Numbered from the stretch's first letter, positions 13,206 through 30,045 are shown. The stretch: DNA of 64,000 nucleotides from Haliotis rubra (GCF_003918875.1 NW_025767247.1:372001-436000); one strand, 5' to 3'. Numbers and translations are program-made. The notes: a model not told the origin generated them from the letters alone.

Positions 13206-13735
13206 ATCTTATCATTTCAGGGCCAAATTCAAATTTATGTAAAACTAGCTTGATAAAATCTTTTTAAACCGTGTCAAACGCTTTTTCAAAGTCAATCAGA
13301 ATAAGCAAACCAGAAATGTTTTGTTTCTTTGTTTCAAACATTATATCATATAGCAATCTTGTAGTTTCACTAATAGTCCTACCCGGTATAAAACCAGCTT
13401 GGTTAGAGTGAATAAGTTCGCCTAAAGTAGCTTTTAATCTATGTGCAATGCAGGAGCTGATAATTTTATGAATAGTAAAGTGATTGGCCTCTAGTAATTA
13501 AGTAATGTTTTATCTTTTTGGATTTTTGGAATACAGGTGATAACATCCCTTTTCATATTTAAAAACAATTATTTTTTTGTTGATACATCTTCAATAAATA
13601 AAGATCCACCTTTTTAAAATTTCTTAAAGAAATCAATAGGAAATCCATCAATCCCTGGGCTTTTATTATTCTTCATCCTGTAAACAGCCTTGTTACAGCC
13701 CTATGACTTACACCACAACAACTTTCTATCAACAG

Positions 13736-13823
13736 ATGAATATAGTAACGGGACTAACGCTTTGCCTGCTGCTGGCGGCGGCATCCACCCGACCGTCCCG
13801 GGTAAAGAGACAACTGGCTAGAG
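13736..13823 (+). CDS. Secreted Met/Gly/Pro-rich repeat protein, coding exon 1 (signal peptide and furin-type site)
   Basis: caacag|ATG; translates to MNIVTGLTLCLLLAAASTRPSRVKRQLAR-G|gtaaga; phase 1 matches the next exon. Confidence 0.75.
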
Positions 13824-14133
13824 GTAAGACCCAAACTCAGGTTCTCCCCGATACATGTTTCCTGACAATACCCATCTAATCATCTAATGCTGGCGTCCTT
13901 GGCATTGATGTTTCCTCCTCGTGACCAGTAATCGATGTTTTTGATGCTGTTATTACATAACTATTAGTACTTATACATGTATATTTCCTTACTGAGGACA
14001 GCGAGGTTGTGGATTACGTGGTCCCGGACAAGGAAGTAAGGCAAGGCGTGACCTGTCATTCAGATTTAAACTGTGATCAATTTCACTGTATCACACCTTG
14101 AGGGTTTTGACAGAACTCCAATGCTTCCTCCAG

Positions 14134-14616
14134 TGTTGTATATAACATGTACATACCATCCTGCCATGTTGTATATAACATGTACATACCATCCTGCCAT
14201 GTTGTATACAACATGTACATACCATACCATGTACCTGCCATGTTGTATATACCATGTACATACCATCCTGCCATGTTGTATATAACATGTACATACCATC
14301 CTGCCTTGTTGTATATAACATGTACATACCATCCTGCCATGTTGTATATAACCATGTACATACCATCCTGCCATGTTGTATATACCATGTACATACCATC
14401 CTGCCATGTTGTATATACCATGTACATACCATCCTGCCATGTTGTATTATACATACCATCCTGCCATGTTGTATATACCATGTACATACCATCCTGCCAT
14501 GTTGTATATACCATGTACATACCATCCTGCCATGTTGTATATAACATGTACATACCATCCTGCCATGTTGTATATAACATGTACATACCATCCTGCCATG
14601 TTGTATATACCATGTA
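14134..14616. repeat. 33-bp intronic minisatellite (tgttgtatataacatgtacataccatcctgcca)n
   Basis: About 14 copies. Confidence 0.95.
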
Positions 14617-16689
14617 CAGCAGGTAGAGTAATAAGGATGGGGTGAGGCATTGCGTATATGCATGTCAGAAGTGGTGAGTACTATGTTAGGAAACACTCCC
14701 ACAGCAGGTAGAGTGGCGATGGGGTGCGGCATTGCGATGCATGTCAGAAAGCAGTGGAGTACTATGTTAGGAAACACACGCTACAACAGGCTGAGTAAGG
14801 ATGGGGGTGAGGCATGTTGCGTGCATGTCCAGAGTAGTGAGTACAGTATGTTAGGAAACACTCCTTCGCTGCAGGCAGAGTCAAGATGGGTGTGCACCAT
14901 TGCTATGTGTATGTCATCGAAAGTATCCCTGCAGCGTATTATGTTATGGAAATACATCCACAGCAGGTAGAGTAAGGATGGGTGTGCTGGCATTGCGTGC
15001 ATGTCAGAAGTAGTGAGAGTACTATGTTAAGAAACACTCCCTACAGCAGGTGCATAGTAAGGATGGGGTGCGGCATTGCGTGCATGTCAGGAAGTGAGTG
15101 TGAGTACTATGTTAGGAAACACACGCTACAGCAGGCTGATGATAAGGATGGAGGTGAGGCATTGCGTGCATGTCAGAAGTAGTGAGTACTATGTTATAGA
15201 AACACTCGCCACAGCAGCAGAGAAATAAGGATGGGTGTGCGGCATTGCATATGCATGTCAGAAGTAGTGAGTACTATGTTAGGGAAACCTCCTACAGCAG
15301 GCTGAGTAAGGATACACGGGGTGCGGCATTGCGTGCATGTATCAGAAGAAGTGGGAGTACTATGTTAGGAAACACTCGCTACAGCAGGTAGAGTAAGGAT
15401 GGGGGTGAGGTATTGCGTGCATGTCAGAAGTAGTGAGTATATGTTAGGGAAACACTCCCTACAGCAGGCAGAATAAGGATAAAGGGGTGAGGCATTGCGT
15501 GCATGTAAAGTAGTGGAAGTACTATGTTAGGAAACACTCCCTACAGCAGGCCTGAGTGGGATGGGGGAAGCGGGGTGGGTGCATGTCACGGCAGTGGTGC
15601 AGTACTATGTTAGGAAACACTCGCTACAGCAGGTGAGAGTAAGGATGGGGTGAGGGTATTGCGTGCATGTCAGAAGTGTGAGTACTATGTTAGGAAACAC
15701 TCCCTACAGCAGGCAGAAAGTAAGGATGGGGGGTGAGGCATTGCGTGCATGTCAGAAGTAGTGAGTACTATGTTAGGAAACACTCGCTACAGCAGGTAGA
15801 GTAAGGATGGGGGTGAGGCATTGCGTGCATGTCAGAAGTGGTGAGTACTATGTTAGGAAACACTCCCTACAGCAGGTAGAGTAAGGATGGGGGTGAGGCA
15901 TTGCGTGCATGTCAGAAGTAGTGAGTACTATGTTAGGAAACACTTCCTACAGCAGGTAGAGTAAGGATGGGGGTGAGGCATTGCGTGCATGTCAGAAGTG
16001 GTGAGTACTATGTTAGGAAACACTCGCTACAGCAGGTAGAGTAAGGATGGGGGTGAGGCATTGCGTGCATGTCAGAAGTAGTGAGTACTATGTTAGGAAA
16101 CACACGCTAGAGCAGGTAGAGTAAGGATGGGGTGAGGCATGTTGCGTGCAGGTGATCAGAAGTAGTCAGAAGTAGTGAGTACTATGTTAGGAAACACACG
16201 CTAGAGCAGGTAGAGTAAGGATGGGGGTGAGGCATTGCGTGCATGTCAGAAGTGGTGAGTACTATGTTAGGAAACACTCGCTACAGCAGGTAGAGTAAGG
16301 ATGGGGGTGAGGCATTGCGTGCATGTCAGAAGTAGTGAGTACTATGTTAGGAAACACACGCTACAGCAGGTAGAGTAAGGATGGGGGTGCGGCATTGCGT
16401 GCATGTCAGAAGTGGTGAGTACTATGTTAGGAAACACTCCCTACAGCAGGTAGAGTAAGGATGGGTGTGCGGCATTGCGTGCATGTCAGAAGTGGTGAGT
16501 ACTATGTTAGGAAACACTCCCTACAGCAGGCTGAGTAAGGATGGGGGTTAGGCATTGCGTGCATGTCAGAAGTGGTGAGTACTATGTTAGGAAACACACG
16601 CTAGAGCAGGTAGAGTAAGGATGGGGGTGAGGCATTGCGTGCATGTCAGAAGTAGTGAGTACTATGTTAGGAAACACTCGCTACAGCAG
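14617..16689. repeat. 80-bp intronic minisatellite, about 26 copies
   Basis: Period 80 (e.g. 15781, 15861, 15941); the 5' half is indel-rich; ends 40 bp before the exon acceptor. Confidence 0.95.
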
Positions 16690-16728
16690 TCAAGTGAGAA
16701 GATTAACACCCAACACCTCACATTCCAG

Positions 16729-17862
16729 ATGCACCAAAGACGGAAGAATCGTCAAAGGATCCTGCCAAGGATGCTGTCCCTAATCCGTTCGCCATGGGTG
16801 GTGCCCGGCTTGGGTCTGGTATGGAAATGCCAGAGATGGGAGGTCTTCAGCGTCACGGAATGCCCGAGGGAGGTCCCCCCATGATGCCCATTGGAGAGGG
16901 TATGCCCGGACTACCACGGGGGGACGTGTTTGGGGGTCCTATGGGAATGCCAGGTGGGTCACTGATGGGCCAAGTGCCACCCCAAGGAACTGACCAGAAC
17001 GGAACAGAGAATGGATTACCTCCATCTTTGTTTGGGGAGCCAATGCAAATGCCAATAGGAATGCAAGGTCATGGAATACCTCCTTCAATGATGGCCCAAG
17101 GAATGCAAGGTCTCGGAATGCCTCCTTCAATGATGGCCCAAGCAATGCAAGGTCATGGAATGCCTCCATCAATGATGGCCCAAGGAATGCAAGGTCATGG
17201 AATGCCTCCTTCAATGATGGTCCAAGGAATGCAAGGTCATGGAATGCCTCCTTCAATGATGGCCCAAGGAATGCAAGGTCATGGTTTGCCTCCATCAATG
17301 ATGTCCCAAGGAATGCAAGGTCACGGAATGCCTCCTTCAATGATGGCCCAAGGAATGCAAGGTCACGGAATGCCTCCTTCAATGATGGCCCAAGGAATGC
17401 AAGGTCATGGTTTGCCTCCATCAATGATGGTCCAAGAAATGCAAGGTCATGGAATGCCTCCTTCAATGATGGCCCAAGGAATGCAAGGTCATGGGATGCC
17501 TCCTTCAATGATGGCCCAAGGAATGCAAGGTCATGGGATGCCTCCTTCAATGATGGCCCAAGGAATGCAAGCACAGCCCATGCCTACCAGTATGCCTGGG
17601 CAACCACCTATACCTGGTATGCGAGGGGGCTTGTCACCAATGATGTTGCGTATGATGGCTAGACAAAGAGCTAGTCGCATGATGGCATCTGGATTGTCTC
17701 CGGTGATGCGTCCTGGTATGTCTCCACGGATGCCCAAGGCAACAGTAGCTGAAGATAAGGAAGGCAAGAAAGATCACAAAGGTCCATCTCCATCCCCCGG
17801 GATGCCGCCAATGAATACGTTGCGTGGTCAGCCAATGCCTCCGACGATGGGGCGAATGGCAG
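16729..17862 (+). CDS. Secreted Met/Gly/Pro-rich repeat protein, coding exon 2 (12 x GMQGHGMPPSMMAQ)
   Basis: ttccag|AT acceptor and GCA G|gtaaga donor, phase 1-1, 1134 nt open; the 42-bp repeats at 17058-17570 carry several synonymous variants. Confidence 0.88.
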
Positions 17863-18199
17863 GTAAGACAACTTGAGAGTAATGAACTATCTGGAAACGT
17901 GTTTAATTTCAGTAACAAAAGCAAGCATCTGTGTTAGTATATATCAACATCATTATCACTAGTAGTAAGATGAGCATATCTGGCTTATCGACGGTAGCAC
18001 TAGCATTTCCAACCATCTTATAAAATGTCATTATAACCTCAGTGCTAGCTGCAGCAACCTTTATGAAGGTAGTCCCTTATACAGAGATGGTACATTATAC
18101 AGTAATGATTTCCTGTCCCTATGTCTCTCACTGTGAGACGGTTGGCCCTCACTCGTGCCAGTGTTCTGCACAATGTATCGGTAGGTGTGCGTGTTTCAG

Positions 18200-18308
18200 G
18201 TAACGGCGATGCCCAACTCACCGTGGCGAAGTTACTGGACTTCGAGAGTCAGATAGACGACATCAGGAAGGCAGTACTCGGCAGCTTCTACAAGGATCTC
18301 CTCCAGTT
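18200..18308 (+). CDS. Secreted Met-rich repeat protein, coding exon 3
   Basis: tttcag|GT acceptor, TT|gtaagt donor; GNGDAQLTVAKLLDFESQIDDIRKAVLGSFYKDLLQ; phase 1-2. Confidence 0.82.
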
Positions 18309-18787
18309 GTAAGTGCACGATGTTGAGGATCTATCGACAGTATTATAAGTACATACAGTGAACACAACTTCATCTGTTTGTAAATTTTGAGGATCTGCAC
18401 AGAGATTATTACAGAAATATGTTGGACTTGTTTTGTCTCTAACGGGCCGTGGTAAAAGTCAAAAGCAAATATCCACTAAATTAATGCTTTGATTGTTCCC
18501 GATGTTTGTTGTTGGCGCTAGCAAAACACCCATAGAAAATACGCATCGTGTTTATATACAGAGACCCAATTTACTCTCTCACACTGGACCCACACAGACA
18601 TGTCAACTCAGCTTTCTCAGTAGATCGGGGACCTGCCACTGATGACATCGGTTGATGCAGCAGATATGCTGTCGTCGCCAGGATCCTGTCTGCCCACATC
18701 AATCCCTTACGCGCACGCAAGCACATACACACAGACACATTCCCAAAGTTTATCCTCAGTATATTCACAGTGTTCCCCTCGTTTCAG

Positions 18788-19019
18788 CCGTGCTATCTCC
18801 AAGGTGTACCGCCTTAAGATGATGTCGAAGCTCGCCCTGGTGAAGGAGTTGGAGGGGCGGATCGCGATGCCCGTGAGAAACATCATGGCCTTGAAGAACA
18901 CCGAGGTCCCCCTCCCAGGGCAACCCCGCCATCGGCCAGCGATGCCAGGGCTACCCCAGGCTATGGAAGGCATCGTAGTGGAGGGTCCCGGAATGACACA
19001 TGCACAAAGACCTTTCTAG
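18788..19019 (+). CDS. Secreted Met-rich repeat protein, terminal exon
   Basis: ttcccctcgtttcag|C acceptor in phase 2; (F)RAISKVYRLKMMSKLALVKELEGR...HAQRPF*; the four exons total 1563 nt = 520 aa plus stop. Confidence 0.8.
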
Positions 19020-19202
19020 AGCCACACAATAACACATTTCGCTCTCGCTGGTTATTCCGAAAGTTTGTCCTTACTTTCTTGTATCATTTTTTTCCATCTT
19101 TAAACACAAGTACAAGAGTCCAACTGATTACTTCTGAAACATAGCTAAGCATCGTTAATGATTATTACATACTCAGTGTCCTGTATCATGTAACCTTGAC
19201 GC

Positions 19203-19208
19203 AATAAA
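19203..19208 (+). terminator. Polyadenylation signal AATAAA of the Met-rich gene
   Basis: First AATAAA after the stop, about 180 nt downstream. Confidence 0.6.
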
Positions 19209-20570: not shown

Positions 20571-22118
20571 TAAACTATAGGAGCGAAAGAAACGTCCCTT
20601 CTAGTAAAGGTGTAAAAACATTTTCTTCTGTTTCGTTATGACGGAAATTTATTTAGGAACACATCTCCCGAACGCATCCCCACGTCTCACAGAAGGAAAT
20701 CCACGTGGGTTTTTGTAAGTAAGCATGAAAATTGCTTTTATTCACGTTTTTGCATGCTTCTGTTGAAACATACCCGTATGAAAGTACAGTATAAAGATTA
20801 TGCTCGACTGTTCAGATTCATCACTTCAATACGTTGGACACAAAGGAACATGCCCCTCGACTGCACGGCGGAACAGAGGAACGAGCTATTGGGATGTTGC
20901 GGCTGGGTGCTTCTCACGGTCACGTTGCAAGAATCATGGGTTGCAGCAAGAAACCATCACCAGACTGATGACACGCTTCAGAACAACAGGTCGGACTGCA
21001 GACAGGCCGAGGACACGGGGAGACCACCCATGTAACCACCCTCATGAAGACCGCCATTTACGGGTGCTTCACTTGCGCAACAGATTCCTGACTGTGACGT
21101 CATCAGCAACAACCAGCCTTACCCATCCAGTCGGTAGAAGGACCATATCCAGACGACTCCGCCGATTCGGTATCAGAGCCTACAGACCATTCCGGGGCGT
21201 GACGTTAACGCGTGAACATCGACGTCGTCGATTGGCTTTGGGCGTAGAGTTCGGCAGTGGCAGCCCGCGGAACTGGCGCCGGGTACTCTTCAGTGACGAG
21301 AGCCGCTTCCAGTTGAACAAAGCTGATGGTCGGGTGCGAGTCACCAGACGTCGGAACGAACGCACAGCACGTTGTTGCGTTCAGGAAGTTGAGACGTTTG
21401 GCGGCGGTAGTGTGATGGTTATGGGGATTTGTGGCGAGAGGAAGACTGGCTTGTTGGTGATAGAGGGAAACCTGAATGCCCGTCGATGCGGTATTGTTTG
21501 TTTACGACCTGTCGTGTTACCCTTCCTCCAGCAGAATCGAGGCGTGTTGTTTCAGCAGGATAACGCTACTCCCCACACTGCTGTTGTTACCCGGAACTTC
21601 CTGAACAACAACTTAACGTAAACGTCGTTCCTTGGCCAGCAAGATCCCCGATTTATCACCTATTGAGCACCTATGGGATCATCTCGGCCGTCAGGTTAAG
21701 CAACGTCAACATCCCCACAGACAAGAAACGCTTTGGCTCCAAGCTCTGGGAAGAATGGCGTCGCATCCCACATCACGTGATCAGACGTCTTGTGCACTCT
21801 GCACGACGTCGTGTGGCAGCATGTAATATCGCTGCAAGAGGTGGATTACACTCGCTACTGAGGAGTTGGACACTCAAAGACACTCTGTCAGTACTGATGT
21901 GCATGTGTTGTCGCCGATCGAAAGCCGGACATTTGAACCTCCTGTGAAAAACGTCACAAAACTCTACTTACAGCAAATTGTTTCAATTGTTCTGTAATGA
22001 CAGTCTGCATAATGTGTTCAAAAAAATATATCAAACATTTCAGCATTGAATTGCACGTGTTTGTATCATTTTATGATACAAAAATGATCGGGGACGTTTC
22101 TTTTTTGCCCCTCGGTTT
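20571..22118 (+). mobile_element. Tc1-family DNA transposon with a frameshifted transposase (about 20800-21860)
   Basis: FSDESRF, FQQDNATPH and PDLSPIEHLW catalytic motifs; imperfect TIR core aaagaaacgtccc (about 20586) / gggacgtttcttt (about 22091). Confidence 0.9.
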
Positions 22119-25485: not shown

Positions 25486-26757
25486 TCACATGGACTGGCG
25501 TCTGCAGTTCTTGCAGGTGCTCTGTTGGGACTGTGGAACGTTTCTATAATGATACCAGTTCATATTTATTGTTTCGCTAAGCATTGCCTTGTGGTGTAGC
25601 CAACTCTCTAGACAGTCTATCACCAACTGATCGAAGTTGGAGTTGAACTTGTTAGCCACGATTTCTGGTCGGCTGACCAGCCAGGGCAGATCTCTGTAGC
25701 TGAAGACACACACGGAACGAACAAACTTCCCATGGCACGGCACTCGGTCCCACTCCCAGATGACGGCCCTGGACAGAACTTGGTTCAACGCGATATCATG
25801 CTTCACAGTCACATTGTAGCCCCCAGGAGCCCCGGGTAAGCCATTCAACGTCGCCCAAACTAGTTCTTCTGGCGCATAACTATCCTCTGCCCAGTCTATC
25901 AACTCTGCTGCAATTTTGCTCTCAAGAATAAATAATACAAAACCACGGGAAAACATCCCATACATGCTGCCCTTGTAGAGCGTGATGTTCTGCTTGAAGG
26001 CTGGTTTGGCGTCAACGAGACGAGTCATCATGGTTCCGTTGATGACCGAGTACCGTGTTTCAAACCTCCAACGCAGATGCTCGGGGAAAGGATATTGTTC
26101 AATATCATTTGTTCCATTCAGTAATTTCAGTATTTGCACAATCTCAAGATTAGTCTTAAGAACAAACTCTTGTCCGGACAAAATAATGTAGTACTTCCAC
26201 TTAACATGGGTGTTAGCCAACATTCTCATACAAGCACGCGCTGCGGTCACTAAGCCAGCGCCGCCATAGACCACCTCCACTTCCTGCAGGACCAGCACGT
26301 TGTGGAAACACTGTGCCCACTGACTGAGGAGTCCCACAGACCGGCGCGCCTTCCGGTCAACGTGGATACAGTACACGTTGTGAGATCTGTAAATTGTTCT
26401 CATCAGCTGGTCAACCTGACCGGGGGCTGTGTGTACGATGAGAGCAAACGCCAACGGGAACACTTTCTCCTCCTCCACTACAGGGCGACGACGTTGATAA
26501 CGTGGCAACAACGCAACGCAGCCTCGCTCTATACCCGTGTTGACACGGGCGTCAGACGGTGGTGAAGATGCTGTATTGACGTCAGCTGGCTCCCCCCTCA
26601 TCAGTCTCCAACATCTTCCTCGTCCTGTCTGAGGGCTTGGGTCACGTGGCATCGTTGTCTTGCGATGTGGACATTGTGTCATCTTTGTGGACAAATATCG
26701 GACCGCGAAGAACATCCCAGCAGCCAAAACAAGTCCGATTAACTTGGATCTTGCCAT
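25486..26757 (-). CDS. Beta-1,6-N-acetylglucosaminyltransferase (core-2/I-branching, GT14, GCNT-like), 423 aa, type II membrane protein
   Basis: ATG in gcctccATGG context 12 nt after acceptor ttgttgcag; N-terminal TM anchor; LAFALIVH, IYRSHNVYCIHVD, WKYYIILSGQE, LYKGS, APEELVWATL, CHGKFVRSVCVF and VANKF motifs; intronless CDS as is typical of core-2 GCNTs. Confidence 0.93.
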   Translation of the reverse strand: MARSKLIGLVLAAGMFFAVRYLSTKMTQCPHRKTTMPRDPSPQTGRGRCWRLMRGEPADVNTASSPPSDARVNTGIERGCVALLPRYQRRRPVVEEEKVFPLAFALIVHTAPGQVDQLMRTIYRSHNVYCIHVDRKARRSVGLLSQWAQCFHNVLVLQEVEVVYGGAGLVTAARACMRMLANTHVKWKYYIILSGQEFVLKTNLEIVQILKLLNGTNDIEQYPFPEHLRWRFETRYSVINGTMMTRLVDAKPAFKQNITLYKGSMYGMFSRGFVLFILESKIAAELIDWAEDSYAPEELVWATLNGLPGAPGGYNVTVKHDIALNQVLSRAVIWEWDRVPCHGKFVRSVCVFSYRDLPWLVSRPEIVANKFNSNFDQLVIDCLESWLHHKAMLSETINMNWYHYRNVPQSQQSTCKNCRRQSM

Positions 26758-26867
26758 GGAGGCTTCACGCTGCAACAACAATAGGAAAATGAGTGAAGAC
26801 GTATAAAATTATCATCACTGTATTTCAATTACGTTACCATATGTCACGGTACATGGACAGTAACGGT

Positions 26868-28023: not shown

Positions 28024-30045
28024 GGCCTGTCCTCATATCGCCTACATCACCGTTTCGCCTACAGTCTTATCAAAACAACTTTATGCACCATTGCACACCA
28101 TTTCCTGCCTATGTTACCCATGGAATAATGGACCAGCCTAAGGGATAAGAAAAACAAACAAATGTATGTGATTCACATTACTTTAATACATTAATAACTT
28201 TGATTTTAAATTAAAATAAATAAAGCACTTCATTGTCATCAGGAGCACACAGAGTTATGAGTTTGATTGAATTGAGTTCTCAGTTTAGCTTGAGGATGTG
28301 GCCAACAGCATCAAGGAACTGCATCACAGACTTCACACCGGTGGAAAGCTGCACCTTGAGTCTCTCGATCCTCTGATCTCGATCACGGTCTACACGTGCT
28401 CGTGGTCTCCTTGCTCCTCCAAGTCCAAACTGTCGTCTTGTGCGCCTGTCTGCCTTCTCGATCTTCTTGAGCTCCTTTACGAATTGGTAGATGTTGGGGT
28501 GTGATCGGGGTATGCGTTTCTTCAAGCCAGAGTGGAATCCCTCAAGATGGTTGTTTGAGCGCGGGCCTGTGTTTTCGTGCTGGTTCCAGATGTGTGCCGG
28601 GAACTTGGCATCATCTTCAACCCAGGTGCTGGTGACGTAGTCGTTGAAGGCTGCTACTCTGTCGCCGTCGGGAGACTGCTCGATGACTTCAAACCAAGCA
28701 TCTTGGACCTGGTTCAGGGGAAGGAGTGGCAAAGCAGCTGCTCGTCGAACGTGGGCTTGACTGCTGGGTTGTTCATGTAGTCGCGAGACAGTCCCTCTCC
28801 AAAACTTGACGCCACAAAGCTTGAGAATAATGGAATAGGCAACCTCGGACGGAACTGTCGGGGAAGACTTCACTAATAGCACTGATAACTGCTGCTTCAT
28901 AGTCGATCTGGAATATTTCTGGTGAAAGTTCGATGCCAAGTCGTCTCACAACAATATCCTTCAGCAAAGTGAAAAGCCTAACATACGTCCGCTTGGTCTT
29001 GTTGGGAAGGAACGCAAAAGCGACAGGAAACATTTTACCATTCACCAGACAATGAATGATGTACACTTGTAGCCACAGGTTAGGACACACAAAGAATGTA
29101 CCATCCATAAAGAGAATGTCAGCGTCGCTCAATAATTCCAGCATCTCGGTTGTAGCAAACAGCAAAAGTCTGTCATCTTTACCGTCGTCTACACAGAGGA
29201 ACTCTCGGCCATCATCGGTCTGGGTCCATATTCCTTCTAGAGTGACGCCAGCCCTGCTCTCAGGCAGTGGTGGGATGGACTTGGCTCTGTGTCTGTACAG
29301 TGCGGCCTGAATATTAGAGTACGTGGGTGCAGTTGCGGCATCATCTTCACCAAGGAGGTCGAGCTCGTTGTTGTAGATCTGCAGCACCGGTGAGATGTCA
29401 GTCTTTACACGCTCTTTTACACGGGCGACGAGTCGGATGTGTTCTCCATTCTCAAAGGGTGGGTGGCTGTGAATAGTGGAGGACACTACGTGGTCTCCGA
29501 TGGTGCTGCTGCGACCATTGCATCCTGTGAGGACACACTTCCAGTGTGTAGCAACCTGTCGCTTGACATTGAGCCTGTACCGGTAGCCTGCATACAGTAA
29601 CTGCTGTCCACCTCTCTGTGAAGTCACGAACTCAGCTCTCTGGAGATTTGCCATTTTGATACCGACTAAAGATCAGTGGCATGTATATATACTTTGAGAA
29701 AATTATGTTGAGATGACCCCTCATTGCAACCACAACAGACCTAATTATAATCTTTTTACTTTTATAAGATAAATCTTTTGAAGTATTAATTCTAATCAAA
29801 ACAATGGGATTATCTCACCCAGGGGGTAAGCATAACCCCCTTCACTAATATCCTTCACTGTATACTTAAAACAAATCATGTATCAATAGTAACTTCTCAA
29901 TAGTCTTCTCTCCCATTTAGTTGCATTCGATGAAACTACAGTGGAATAGGGCCATTCCATTCCCTGAACAGGGTAGATGGGATTTGACAGGATGTTTATA
30001 TAAGCTGTAGGCGAAATAGTGGTGTAGGCGATATGAGGTCAAACC
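28024..30045 (-). mobile_element. Mutator-like (MULE) DNA transposon with a FLYWCH-DDE transposase (29654-28280, one frameshift near 28775)
   Basis: About 45-bp imperfect TIRs gg(cc/tt)tg(t/a)cctcatatcgcctaca; 8-bp TSD GACTCACC at 28016-28023 and 30046-30053; FLYWCH-like LLYAGYRY..WKC..C..HSH; DGTF, IDYE, CLFH and NNHLEGFH motifs. Confidence 0.93.

What the first reader, a model, noticed from the sequence alone, without database searches (positions are those of the whole stretch)
13736..19208. Hidden four-exon gene for a secreted, probably furin-processed, Met/His/Gly repeat protein
Seen: a short exon missing from the ORF track (MNIVTGLTLCLLLAAASTRPSRVKR|QLAR) splices in phase through three more exons to give 520 aa. 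The layout is signal peptide, R-x-K-R site exposing an N-terminal Gln, a Cys-free M/G/P/Q low-complexity body with 12 x GMQGHGMPPSMMAQ, and a roughly 60-aa helical-looking C-terminal domain. The repeats vary at synonymous sites (CAT/CAC, CCT/CCA, GGA/GGG) and have no indels, which favours real coding. Established: R-x-K/R-R is the furin consensus, and repetitive low-complexity secreted proteins are typical of molluscan shell, adhesive and gamete matrices. Inference: a lineage-specific structural or self-assembling protein, with regularly spaced His/Met possibly giving Cu/Zn binding or pH/redox-triggered coacervation. I do not recognise a named family.
Basis: partly seen in the sequence, partly recalled or inferred. 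Interest (0 to 1): 0.8.

Follow-up and report, generated by a model that had tools for sequence, protein, structure and literature searches.

The report
Abalone secreted methionine-rich repeat protein gene
The four-exon gene is real: it encodes a secreted, cysteine-free abalone protein made of methionine/glycine/proline repeats and ending in one long conserved helix. It belongs to an unnamed snail protein family whose function is still unknown.

Summary
Exons 13736-13823, 16729-17862, 18200-18308 and 18788-19019 join in phase through GT-AG introns to give 520 codons. They encode a signal peptide, RVKR|Q, 12 exact 14-residue GMQGHGMPPSMMAQ units and a roughly 66-residue helix.

The window is abalone, with 100% identity to a 5'-truncated Haliotis rubra RefSeq model. 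Full-length orthologues are already predicted in H. asinina, H. cracherodii and H. rufescens under meaningless composition-driven names (MED15-like, collagen-like). So the gene is hidden only in H. rubra.

Evidence for coding:
- dN/dS against H. asinina is 0.06 for exon 1 and 0.12-0.15 for the helix exons.
- All 12 indels in a second individual lie outside the exons.

The gene is not Haliotis-specific. A profile search found Batillaria (Caenogastropoda) and four environmental transcripts with the same layout. Batillaria shares the phase-2 intron inside the helix and has an unannotated first exon with a signal peptide, RPS and RSKR.

His is not conserved across the family; Met is. There is no Pfam, PDB or literature match. 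No RNA run was reachable, and the protein's peptides were absent from a published abalone shell proteome.

Best guess: a self-assembling extracellular scaffold, with the helix as a docking or oligomerising module. That function is inferred. Interest is moderate.

The parts
13736..13823 (+). Coding exon 1: signal peptide MNIVTGLTLCLLLAAAS, then TRPS-RVKR|QLAR. It ends in phase 1.
   Evidence: 97% aa identity and dN/dS 0.06 against H. asinina. RPS and a following R-x-K-R are conserved as far as Batillaria.
13824..16728 (+). Intron 1, mostly satellite DNA: a 33-bp array at 14126-14618 and an 80-bp array at 14615-16689. The 42-nt cassette exon of other abalones is absent here.
   Evidence: A second individual shows indels and a 1590-bp skip in this intron.
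16729..17862 (+). Coding exon 2: the Met/Gly/Pro/Gln-rich disordered body (M 20%, G 18%, P 16%), one conserved NGT sequon, and the basic MMLRMMARQRASRMMA stretch.
   Evidence: dN/dS is 0.37 for the N-terminal part and 0.81 for the C-terminal part against H. asinina.
17058..17561 (+). 12 tandem 42-bp units encoding GMQGHGMPPSMMAQ, in exact register with no indels.
17863..18199 (+). Intron 2 (phase 1), GT...AG.
   Evidence: A phase-1 intron lies three residues further on in Batillaria.
18200..18308 (+). Coding exon 3: the first half of the conserved helix (…LLDFESQIDDIRKAVLGSFYKDLLQ).
   Evidence: dN/dS 0.12.
18309..18787 (+). Intron 3 (phase 2). It splits the F/Y codon inside the helix.
   Evidence: Batillaria has an intron in the same alignment column and the same phase.
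18788..19019 (+). Coding exon 4: the second half of the helix (RAISKVYRLKMMSKLALVKELEGRIAMPVR…), a Pro-rich tail ending QRPF, and stop TAG at 19017-19019.
   Evidence: dN/dS 0.15.
18223..18902 (+). Span of the predicted single long alpha-helix: coding parts 18223-18308 and 18788-18902, interrupted by intron 3.
   Evidence: AlphaFold2 predicts a helix at residues 14-80 of P0005:160-277, with about 46 residues at pLDDT 90 or more (same result).
19203..19208 (+). AATAAA polyadenylation signal, 184 nt after the stop codon.
   Evidence: The 3' region aligns with H. asinina as far as window 19369.

Best explanation
This is a genuine, single-copy, protein-coding gene of an abalone, most likely Haliotis rubra. 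Its product enters the secretory pathway through a classical signal peptide. It is probably trimmed by a furin-type proprotein convertase at a conserved RPS…R-x-K-R site a few residues after the signal peptide. The mature protein would be about 50 kDa, basic (pI 9-10 in the orthologues) and Cys-free. Most of the protein is an intrinsically disordered Met/Gly/Pro/Gln-rich repeat region whose repeat number and unit length drift between species. It ends in a strongly conserved 65-residue helix with invariant G, E, SFYxDL, E and PxR. The gene belongs to an unnamed family with this same architecture, present at least in Vetigastropoda and Caenogastropoda. My inference about mechanism is that the disordered Met-rich body is the material-forming part: a flexible, sticky, possibly elastomeric or condensate-forming chain, as in other molluscan Gly/Met-rich matrix proteins. 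The lone conserved helix would be the module that oligomerises the chains or docks them to a partner. Shown here: gene structure, conservation, selection, family membership and the helix prediction. Inferred: secretion, convertase cleavage, and the extracellular scaffold or self-assembly function.
For: Gene reality:
- The exons are in phase, have canonical splice sites and total 1563 nt.
- The junctions are identical in RefSeq orthologues.
- dN/dS against H. asinina is 0.06 (exon 1), 0.12 and 0.15 (helix exons), with dS 0.27-0.42.
- All 12 indels between this assembly and a second individual's contigs (about 4% diverged) fall in introns. The rough probability under uniform placement is 0.001-0.005.
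- The repeats keep exact register, and about half of their differences are synonymous.

Family:
- An exhaustive profile search with the C-terminus found P0008-P0012 at E from 1e-8 to 1e-3, all matching the helix at their C-termini.
- All of them carry Met-rich repeats upstream.
- Alignment A3 shows the invariant residues G, E, SFY-DL, E and P-R.
- Batillaria shares the phase-2 intron at the same helix column and has a phase-1 intron three residues from the Haliotis one.
- Batillaria has an unannotated first exon, MAVARALCVLLLVGAVTSRPSVETRSKR…, with a phase-1 donor.
- The gene is single-copy in its own genome.

Helix: AlphaFold2 predicts one 66-67-residue helix, about 46 residues at pLDDT 90 or more, from two different alignments.

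Scaffold analogy: Met-rich regions are the common feature of insoluble shell and ligament matrix proteins of Pinctada, and recombinant NU-5 aggregates (PMC7591529). Abductin is a Gly/Met-rich random-coil elastomer (PMC13052691). Limpet larval shell-field cells express Gly/Met-rich proteins (bioRxiv 10.1101/2024.05.16.592602).
Against: - There is no RNA, tissue or protein evidence for this gene. No RNA run was served, and the two runs laid were DNA.
- Its tryptic-type peptides and repeat words are absent from the 28 supplements of the H. laevigata shell proteome. They are also absent from all searchable full texts.
- The hydrophobic 3.6-residue periodicity of the helix is not significant against shuffles (141 of 1000 reach it), so a canonical coiled coil is not shown.
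- The resemblance to known Met-rich matrix proteins is compositional only. None of those seen here carries the SFYxDL helix.
- Convertase cleavage is inferred from the motif and its conservation only.
Confidence: 0.45

Rival explanations
1. Shell-matrix protein in the strict sense. It would be secreted by the larval shell field or the adult mantle and built into the organic framework of the shell, like Lottia GMP, Pinctada MRNP34/NU-5 or the H. laevigata G/M/P-rich nacre protein idb_54497.
For: The composition and signal peptide fit repetitive low-complexity shell proteins. Gly/Met-rich proteins mark limpet larval shell-field cells. A G/M/P-rich repeat protein is a major nacre component in H. 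laevigata. Relatives turn up as intron-free roughly 1-kb environmental contigs; the samples were not identified, and planktonic larvae are only one conceivable source.
Against: None of its peptides (DFESQIDD, AVLGSFYK, PPSMMAQ) occurs in the H. laevigata nacre or prismatic proteome supplements. This is weak evidence, because the database used there may have lacked the transcript and some files are truncated. There are no acidic or chitin-binding regions, and pI is 9-10. The printed limpet GM-rich and RLCD sequences lack the helix.
Confidence: 0.2
2. Extracellular metal-binding protein. The Met/His motifs of the 14-mer (MxxH, HxM, MxxxM) would chelate Cu(I) or Zn, as bacterial Met/His-rich copper-resistance proteins and Ctr1 Mets motifs do. 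This would buffer metal or trigger assembly.
For: H. rubra exon 2 carries 11 MxxH, 9 HxM, 28 MxxxM and 16 MM motifs. MQG-H-GM resembles the Met/His-rich repeats of bacterial CopA and PcoE (from memory, not tested). Abalone handle large amounts of copper for hemocyanin (general knowledge).
Against: His is dispensable. H. cracherodii has 4 and H. rufescens 2 units of the type without Gly-His by the pattern count, and Batillaria and P0009 have 0.4-0.5% His with no MxxH or HxM motifs. No metal data exist.
Confidence: 0.12
3. Prohormone or signalling-protein precursor. The conserved helix would be a hormone-like ligand released from a disposable repeat region.
For: The protein is secreted, has a conserved convertase site, and its most conserved part is a roughly 65-residue helix. 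The extreme C-terminus is similar in three lineages (QRPF, RHQF, RPQFQ).
Against: No dibasic sites flank the helix in any member and there is no amidation Gly. The single RxKR lies at the N-terminus. Pfam peptide-hormone families give no hit. The repeat body is maintained in every member.
Confidence: 0.06
4. Gamete-recognition or fertilisation protein working like sea-urchin bindin: a convertase-processed precursor with Met/Gly/Gln-rich flanks of variable repeat number around one conserved helical core.
For: The architecture is parallel (bindin features from memory). Repeat number and unit length differ between abalone species, and the linker evolves at dN/dS 0.4-0.8 while the core is conserved.
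Against: No Pfam Bindin hit even at E up to 1. There is no expression data. Fast-evolving disordered linkers are common in any protein.
Confidence: 0.05
5. Not a functional gene: a minisatellite that happens to keep a frame open, stitched to chance splice sites.
For: The window is full of satellites that give long spurious ORFs on both strands, including an antisense 211-aa ORF across this same repeat.
Against: Purifying selection acts on exons 1, 3 and 4. Indels are confined to introns. Orthologues exist in four other abalones and a homologue with a shared intron phase in Batillaria.
Confidence: 0.02

Closest known systems
RefSeq predicted abalone proteins XP_071092822.1 and XP_071092821.1 (H. 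cracherodii), XP_067679940.1 (H. asinina), XP_046344362-4.2 (H. rufescens), XP_046543529.1 (H. rubra, partial)
   Same: They are orthologues: 66-100% identity over exon 2, the same exon junctions, the same signal peptide, RxKR site, repeats and helix.
   Different: Their names (MED15-like, collagen alpha-like, WDR33-like, pan1-like) are composition artefacts, and no such Pfam domain is present. Most include a 42-nt cassette exon that is missing in this window. The H. rubra model lacks exon 1 and the first 243 residues of the 520-residue product (it starts in the eighth repeat).
Batillaria attramentaria KAK7476436.1 (hypothetical protein, partial) and environmental transcripts P0008/L008, P0009, P0010, P0012
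   Same: Same architecture: Met/Pro/Gln/Gly repeats followed by the conserved helix (invariant SFYxDL and PxR). Batillaria shares intron phase and position and the signal/RPS/RxKR exon.
   Different: Only 24-32% identity in the helix region. The repeat units are quite different (PGMMPPQM, GMGMPPQG, MMGQNP) and there is little or no His.
Molluscan Gly/Met-rich matrix and elastomer proteins: Lottia GMP (B3A0R1), scallop abductin, Pinctada LMP/NU-5/MRNP34, H. laevigata idb_54497
   Same: Secreted, repetitive, disordered, Met- and Gly-rich. They are proposed to self-assemble or give elasticity (PMC7591529, PMC13052691, PMC6003135).
   Different: No shared domain. Abductin is Pro-poor with GGFGGMGGGX units. 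idb_54497 ends in a Cys-containing domain. None seen here has the SFYxDL helix or the RPS…RxKR start. No homology was shown.
Sea-urchin bindin (analogy only, recalled from memory)
   Same: A convertase-processed secreted precursor with Met/Gly/Gln-rich, repeat-number-variable flanks around one conserved helical core.
   Different: No sequence similarity detectable (no Pfam hit). The core sits at the C-terminus here. No gamete expression is known.
Bacterial and yeast Met (and His) copper-binding motifs: CopA/PcoE/SilE, Ctr1 Mets motifs (analogy, from memory)
   Same: Dense MxxH, HxM and MxxxM motifs in a flexible extracytoplasmic region.
   Different: His is not conserved within the family, and the contexts and taxa are unrelated. 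Binding was not tested.

Membership tests
Unnamed gastropod Met-rich repeat / C-terminal SFYxDL-helix family (defined in this report) | Conserved roughly 65-residue C-terminal helix with invariant G, E, S-F-Y-x-D-L, E, P-x-R | tested here: met
   Profile search E from 1e-8 to 1e-3 for five non-Haliotis proteins; alignment A3; AlphaFold2 helix.
Unnamed gastropod Met-rich repeat / C-terminal SFYxDL-helix family (defined in this report) | Cys-free Met/Pro/Gln/Gly-rich repeat body upstream of the helix | tested here: met
   Met is 9-20% and Cys is 0 in the mature part of every member.
Unnamed gastropod Met-rich repeat / C-terminal SFYxDL-helix family (defined in this report) | First coding exon = signal peptide + RPS + R-x-K-R, ending in phase 1; phase-2 intron inside the helix | tested here: met
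   Window, H. asinina L010 and Batillaria L009. Not testable for the environmental transcripts, which are N-terminally incomplete.
Furin / proprotein-convertase substrates | R-X-K/R-R motif in a protein that passes through the secretory pathway | tested here: met
   RVKR, REKR and RSKR follow a signal peptide in five species. The signal peptide was judged by eye (11-residue hydrophobic core, small residues at -3 and -1); no SignalP was available.
Furin / proprotein-convertase substrates | Actual cleavage, giving an N-terminal Gln or pGlu | not testable with these tools
   Needs N-terminal sequencing or proteomics.
Mollusc shell matrix proteins | Peptides recovered from shell extracts | tested here: inconclusive
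   No occurrence of four diagnostic words in 28 supplements of the H. laevigata shell proteome. Some files are truncated, and that study's database may have lacked this transcript.
Abductin | GGFGGMGGGX decapeptide repeats, very low Pro (PMC13052691) | tested here: not met
   The repeat is GMQGHGMPPSMMAQ and Pro is 14-16%.
Collagen / MED15 / WDR33 / Pan1 (the RefSeq names) | The respective Pfam domains (collagen triple-helix repeat, Med15, WD40, EH) | tested here: not met
   No Pfam family at E up to 1 apart from sub-threshold noise. There is no Gly-X-Y periodicity.
Bindin | Match to the Pfam Bindin core | tested here: not met
   Pfam-A scans of the exons and of seven family members list no Bindin hit.
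Peptide-hormone precursors (ELH/CRH-like) | Bioactive helix flanked by dibasic sites, C-terminal Gly for amidation | tested here: not met
   No KR or RR flanks the helix in any member.
Met/His copper-binding repeat proteins | Conserved MxxH / HxxM-type motifs and measurable Cu(I)/Ag(I) binding | tested here: inconclusive
   The motifs are abundant in Haliotis but absent in Batillaria, P0009 and P0012. Binding is not testable here.

The most novel reading that the evidence does not exclude
The RPS-RxKR start, Met-only repeat body and SFYxDL helix define an ancient, so far undescribed molluscan family of secreted proteins. In this reading, dozens of flexible thioether side chains make a redox- or Cu(I)-responsive extracellular condensate or elastomer, and the conserved helix anchors or multimerises it. 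That would be a new class of methionine-based biomaterial protein with a dedicated docking domain.
Probability: 0.15. Interest if true: 0.65.

Novelty: new variant of a known kind. Interest (0 to 1): 0.4.

Why it matters
Practically, the work corrects annotation. The H. rubra RefSeq model is 5'-truncated, the Batillaria model lacks its first exon, and the RefSeq names in four abalone species are misleading.

Biologically, it turns an apparently orphan low-complexity protein into a definable family. The family has a conserved processing site, a conserved helix and shared intron positions across two gastropod subclasses. Those subclasses diverged in the Palaeozoic (my own knowledge).

That gives a tractable handle on what methionine-rich disordered extracellular proteins do in molluscs. 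Until now this has been argued only from composition, for shell, ligament and larval shell-field proteins. The contrast between natural 14-mers with Gly-His and 12-mers without it is a ready-made experiment on whether His matters.

Tried and rejected
- RNA evidence: the look-up of sequencing runs returned no RNA holder.
- Pfam on every exon and on seven family members: nothing above noise.
- Word-based protein searches: the first found only abalone orthologues, and the C-terminal region search found the same. A third search, with a mixed alignment, was swamped by low-complexity words and did not even recover known distant members. Its blank therefore means nothing.
- ESM Atlas: no feature hit. 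The structure hits were only generic long helices.
- PDB by sequence (best hit Liprin-alpha-2, E 0.027) and by fold (best E 9): no meaningful match.
- Metagenome contig scan: only re-found the P0008 contig.
- Own-genome search for paralogues: the single weak hit (L004) is a protein kinase, which I rejected.
- Coiled-coil support from hydrophobic periodicity: not significant.
- Literature: no paper contains its peptides, its accessions or the sample ids. The H. laevigata G/M/P-rich nacre protein idb_54497 is a different protein. The printed limpet GM-rich and RLCD sequences lack the helix motif.
- Cassette exon in intron 1 of the window: not found by regex, tblastn or blastn.
Exons were searched separately by reference, and full-length comparisons used database orthologues. 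Only the length and codon phases of the joined model were computed.

Full report
**1. What is in the sequence**

- The ATG is at 13736. Exon 1 ends at 13823 (…GCT AGA G|gtaaga).
- Exon 2 is 16729-17862, exon 3 is 18200-18308, and exon 4 is 18788-19019 with a TAG stop.
- All introns are GT…AG, with phases 1, 1 and 2. The four exons add up to 1563 nt, which is 520 codons plus the stop.
- AATAAA lies at 19203-19208.
- Tandem Repeats Finder reports a 42-bp unit, 12.3 copies, 93% matches and no indels at 17057-17571.
- A script finds 12 units of GMQGHGMPPSMMAQ in perfect 14-residue register. They show 10 synonymous and 9 non-synonymous differences from the consensus, and 11 of the 19 are at third codon positions.
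- The only Cys is in the signal peptide.

Exons were searched one by one by reference, and full-length comparisons used database orthologues.

**2. Whose gene it is, and whether it is hidden**

The word-based protein search with exon 2 returned five abalone proteins.
- XP_046543529.1 of Haliotis rubra is 100% identical but has only 277 residues. It starts inside the repeat array, so that RefSeq model lacks exon 1 and the first 243 residues of the 520-residue product.
- Full-length orthologues exist in H. asinina (XP_067679940.1, 493 aa), H. cracherodii (XP_071092822.1 with 519 aa and XP_071092821.1 with 533 aa) and H. rufescens (XP_046344362-4.2).
- Their names (mediator subunit 15-like, collagen alpha-like, WDR33-like, pan1-like) reflect composition only. 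Pfam finds none of those domains.

The window is contig C2357 of a 1.378-Gb, 2855-contig assembly. From memory that fits the published H. rubra genome.

The two downstream junctions are those of the H. rubra RefSeq model. The gene is therefore hidden only in this species' annotation.

**3. Evidence that it codes**

No RNA run was served for this stretch. The two runs offered turned out to be genomic contigs of another individual, about 4% diverged, and they run straight through the introns.

Three indirect tests all favour coding.
- All 12 indels between that individual and the window lie in introns and none in the 1563 exonic bases. The rough probability of this under uniform placement is 0.001-0.005, depending on how coverage is counted.
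- Of the 22 exonic substitutions listed, 9 are synonymous.
- I compared H. rubra with the H. asinina locus L010 exon by exon, leaving out split codons. dS is 0.27-0.42 in exon 1, the N-terminal part of exon 2 and exons 3-4, and 0.13 in the C-terminal part of exon 2. dN/dS is 0.06 for exon 1, 0.12 and 0.15 for exons 3 and 4, 0.37 for the N-terminal part of exon 2 and 0.81 for the linker after the repeats.

The short hidden exon is thus the most constrained part of the gene.

**4. A fifth exon elsewhere**

H. asinina, H. rufescens and H. cracherodii isoform X1 contain 14 extra residues (ESPFVARNxNAET-) between exons 1 and 2. In H. asinina these come from a 42-nt phase-1 cassette exon at L010:10994-11035.

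Regex, tblastn and blastn find no counterpart in the window. There, the corresponding part of intron 1 is occupied by a 33-bp and an 80-bp satellite. In this assembly the four-exon form is the only possible one.

**5. It is not abalone-specific**

The claim of lineage specificity rests on an absence of relatives, so I spent the exhaustive profile search on the C-terminal 150 residues (alignment A2).

Besides abalone, it found five proteins at E from 1e-8 to 1e-3, each matching the helix region at its own C-terminus. One is KAK7476436.1 of Batillaria attramentaria (Caenogastropoda). The other four are unnamed proteins from environmental assemblies.

Every one has Met/Pro/Gln/Gly-rich repeats upstream: PGMMPPQM, GMGMPPQG, PRMQQMPTMQD and MMGQNP types. 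The contig L008 carries an uninterrupted reading frame of at least 339 residues across the places where gastropod genes have introns. It is therefore most likely a transcript.

The alignment of eight members (A3) shows invariant G, E, S-F-Y-x-D-L, E and P-x-R within about 65 residues.

Gene structure adds independent support.
- In Batillaria (L009) the helix is split by a phase-2 intron in the same alignment column (the F/Y after DLxx) as in Haliotis.
- A phase-1 intron lies three residues from the Haliotis one.

The Batillaria model is 5'-partial. At 2.3 kb upstream I found its missing first exon, L009:7654-7757. It encodes MAVARALCVLLLVGAVTSRPSVETRSKRASETPS and ends in a phase-1 GTAAGT donor that fits the next exon.

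Signal peptide, RPS and R-x-K-R are therefore conserved between two gastropod subclasses. The gene is single-copy in its own genome: the only other weak hit is a protein kinase.

**6. The C-terminal domain**

AlphaFold2 predicts one continuous helix of 66-67 residues, about 46 of them at pLDDT 90 or more, with disordered flanks. It gives the same result from the abalone-only alignment and from the eight-member alignment.

Such lone helices usually pair with themselves or with a partner, but I could not show that here. The 3.6-residue hydrophobic periodicity is no stronger than in 14% of shuffles. PDB sequence and fold searches give nothing meaningful. The Atlas structure hits are generic long helices.

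**7. What the repeats say about mechanism**

The mature orthologues are 47-52 kDa with pI 9.1-9.9. They contain M 16-18%, G 13-16%, P about 14% and Q 8-10%, no Cys, and almost no aromatics. One NGT sequon is conserved in abalone.

- H. cracherodii and H. rufescens carry many 12-residue units without Gly-His.
- His is 0.4-0.5% in Batillaria and P0009.
- MxxH and HxM motifs are absent from three distant members.

What is constant is dense Met in a Pro/Gly/Gln context.

The literature offers only compositional parallels.
- Met-rich regions are common to the insoluble matrix proteins of Pinctada nacre, prisms and ligament, and recombinant NU-5 aggregates (PMC7591529).
- Abductin is a Gly/Met-rich random-coil rubber (PMC13052691).
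- A G/M/P-rich repeat protein is a major H. laevigata nacre component (PMC6003135).
- Limpet larval shell-field cells express Gly/Met-rich proteins (bioRxiv 10.1101/2024.05.16.592602).

None of the sequences I could inspect has the SFYxDL helix. The present protein's diagnostic peptides are absent from the H. laevigata shell proteome supplements and from all searchable full texts.

**8. Most likely explanation and rivals**

I commit to the following. It is a secreted, convertase-trimmed, intrinsically disordered Met-rich protein that forms or joins an extracellular material (matrix, gel or elastomer). The conserved helix is the oligomerising or docking module.

My confidence that the gene and the family are real is about 0.95 and 0.9. 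My confidence in the functional reading is about 0.35-0.45.

Rivals:
- A shell-matrix protein in the strict sense (0.2).
- A Met/His metal binder (0.12), weakened by the non-conservation of His.
- A hormone precursor (0.06); no dibasic sites flank the helix.
- A bindin-like gamete protein (0.05); there is no homology and no expression data.
- An open-frame satellite artefact (0.02), refuted by selection, indel distribution and orthology.

**9. Novelty and verdict**

The gene is not new to databases, but it is uncharacterised, misnamed and mis-modelled in two species. The family it defines has no Pfam entry and no publication that I could find.

Relative to known Gly/Met-rich molluscan proteins, it is a new variant. 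It has a conserved N-terminal processing motif and a conserved C-terminal helix. Interest is moderate (0.4): a solid, testable family definition, but no function yet and no surprising mechanism shown.

Noticed in passing
window 13733-13735; L010 9998-10000; L009 7651-7653: In H. rubra, H. asinina and Batillaria the start ATG is directly preceded by CAG after a pyrimidine-rich stretch. This looks like a conserved splice acceptor, so an untranslated upstream exon may exist and the transcript may have one more exon than the coding model. Similarity to H. asinina starts only about 40 nt upstream of the ATG, and a high-copy repeat ends near 13692 (contig depth 144-713).
   Followed up: partly
L009:7654-7757 (Batillaria attramentaria JACVVK020000376.1): The first coding exon of KAK7476436.1 (signal peptide, RPS, RSKR, phase-1 donor) is not annotated. 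The GenBank model is 5'-partial and starts 2.3 kb further down.
   Followed up: yes
window 17370-19019 (XP_046543529.1): The H. rubra RefSeq model of this gene is truncated. It starts at a Met inside the eighth repeat and lacks exon 1 and the first 243 residues of the 520-residue product.
   Followed up: yes
window 14126-16689 (intron 1): A 33-bp satellite (about 15 copies) is followed by an 80-bp satellite (about 25 copies). They fill the place where H. asinina has unique intron sequence and a 42-nt cassette exon. Another individual's contig joins 14167 to 15758, which suggests array-length polymorphism or assembly collapse.
   Followed up: partly
P0004 (H. rufescens XP_046344363.2), residues 460-499: The isoform X2 model ends in an unrelated tail (…LLYPQCLLFQACYLQGIPPEDAV…). 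The tail resembles an out-of-frame reading of exon 4, so it is probably a mis-spliced or mis-assembled model.
   Followed up: no
window 25486-26781 (-): A single-exon 431-aa ORF with a full Core-2/I-branching enzyme domain (PF02485, E 7e-37), i.e. a GT14 glycosyltransferase gene 6.5 kb downstream on the other strand.
   Followed up: partly
window 28773-29654 (-) and 20800-21621 (+): Transposon remnants: a FLYWCH + MULE transposase ORF and a Tc3-type HTH transposase fragment. Most other long ORFs in the window are satellite artefacts open on both strands.
   Followed up: partly
alignment A3, extreme C-termini: Three lineages end in a similar short motif (abalone …AQRPF, P0008 …SRHQF, P0010 …TRPQFQ). 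The others do not, and its meaning is unknown.
   Followed up: no
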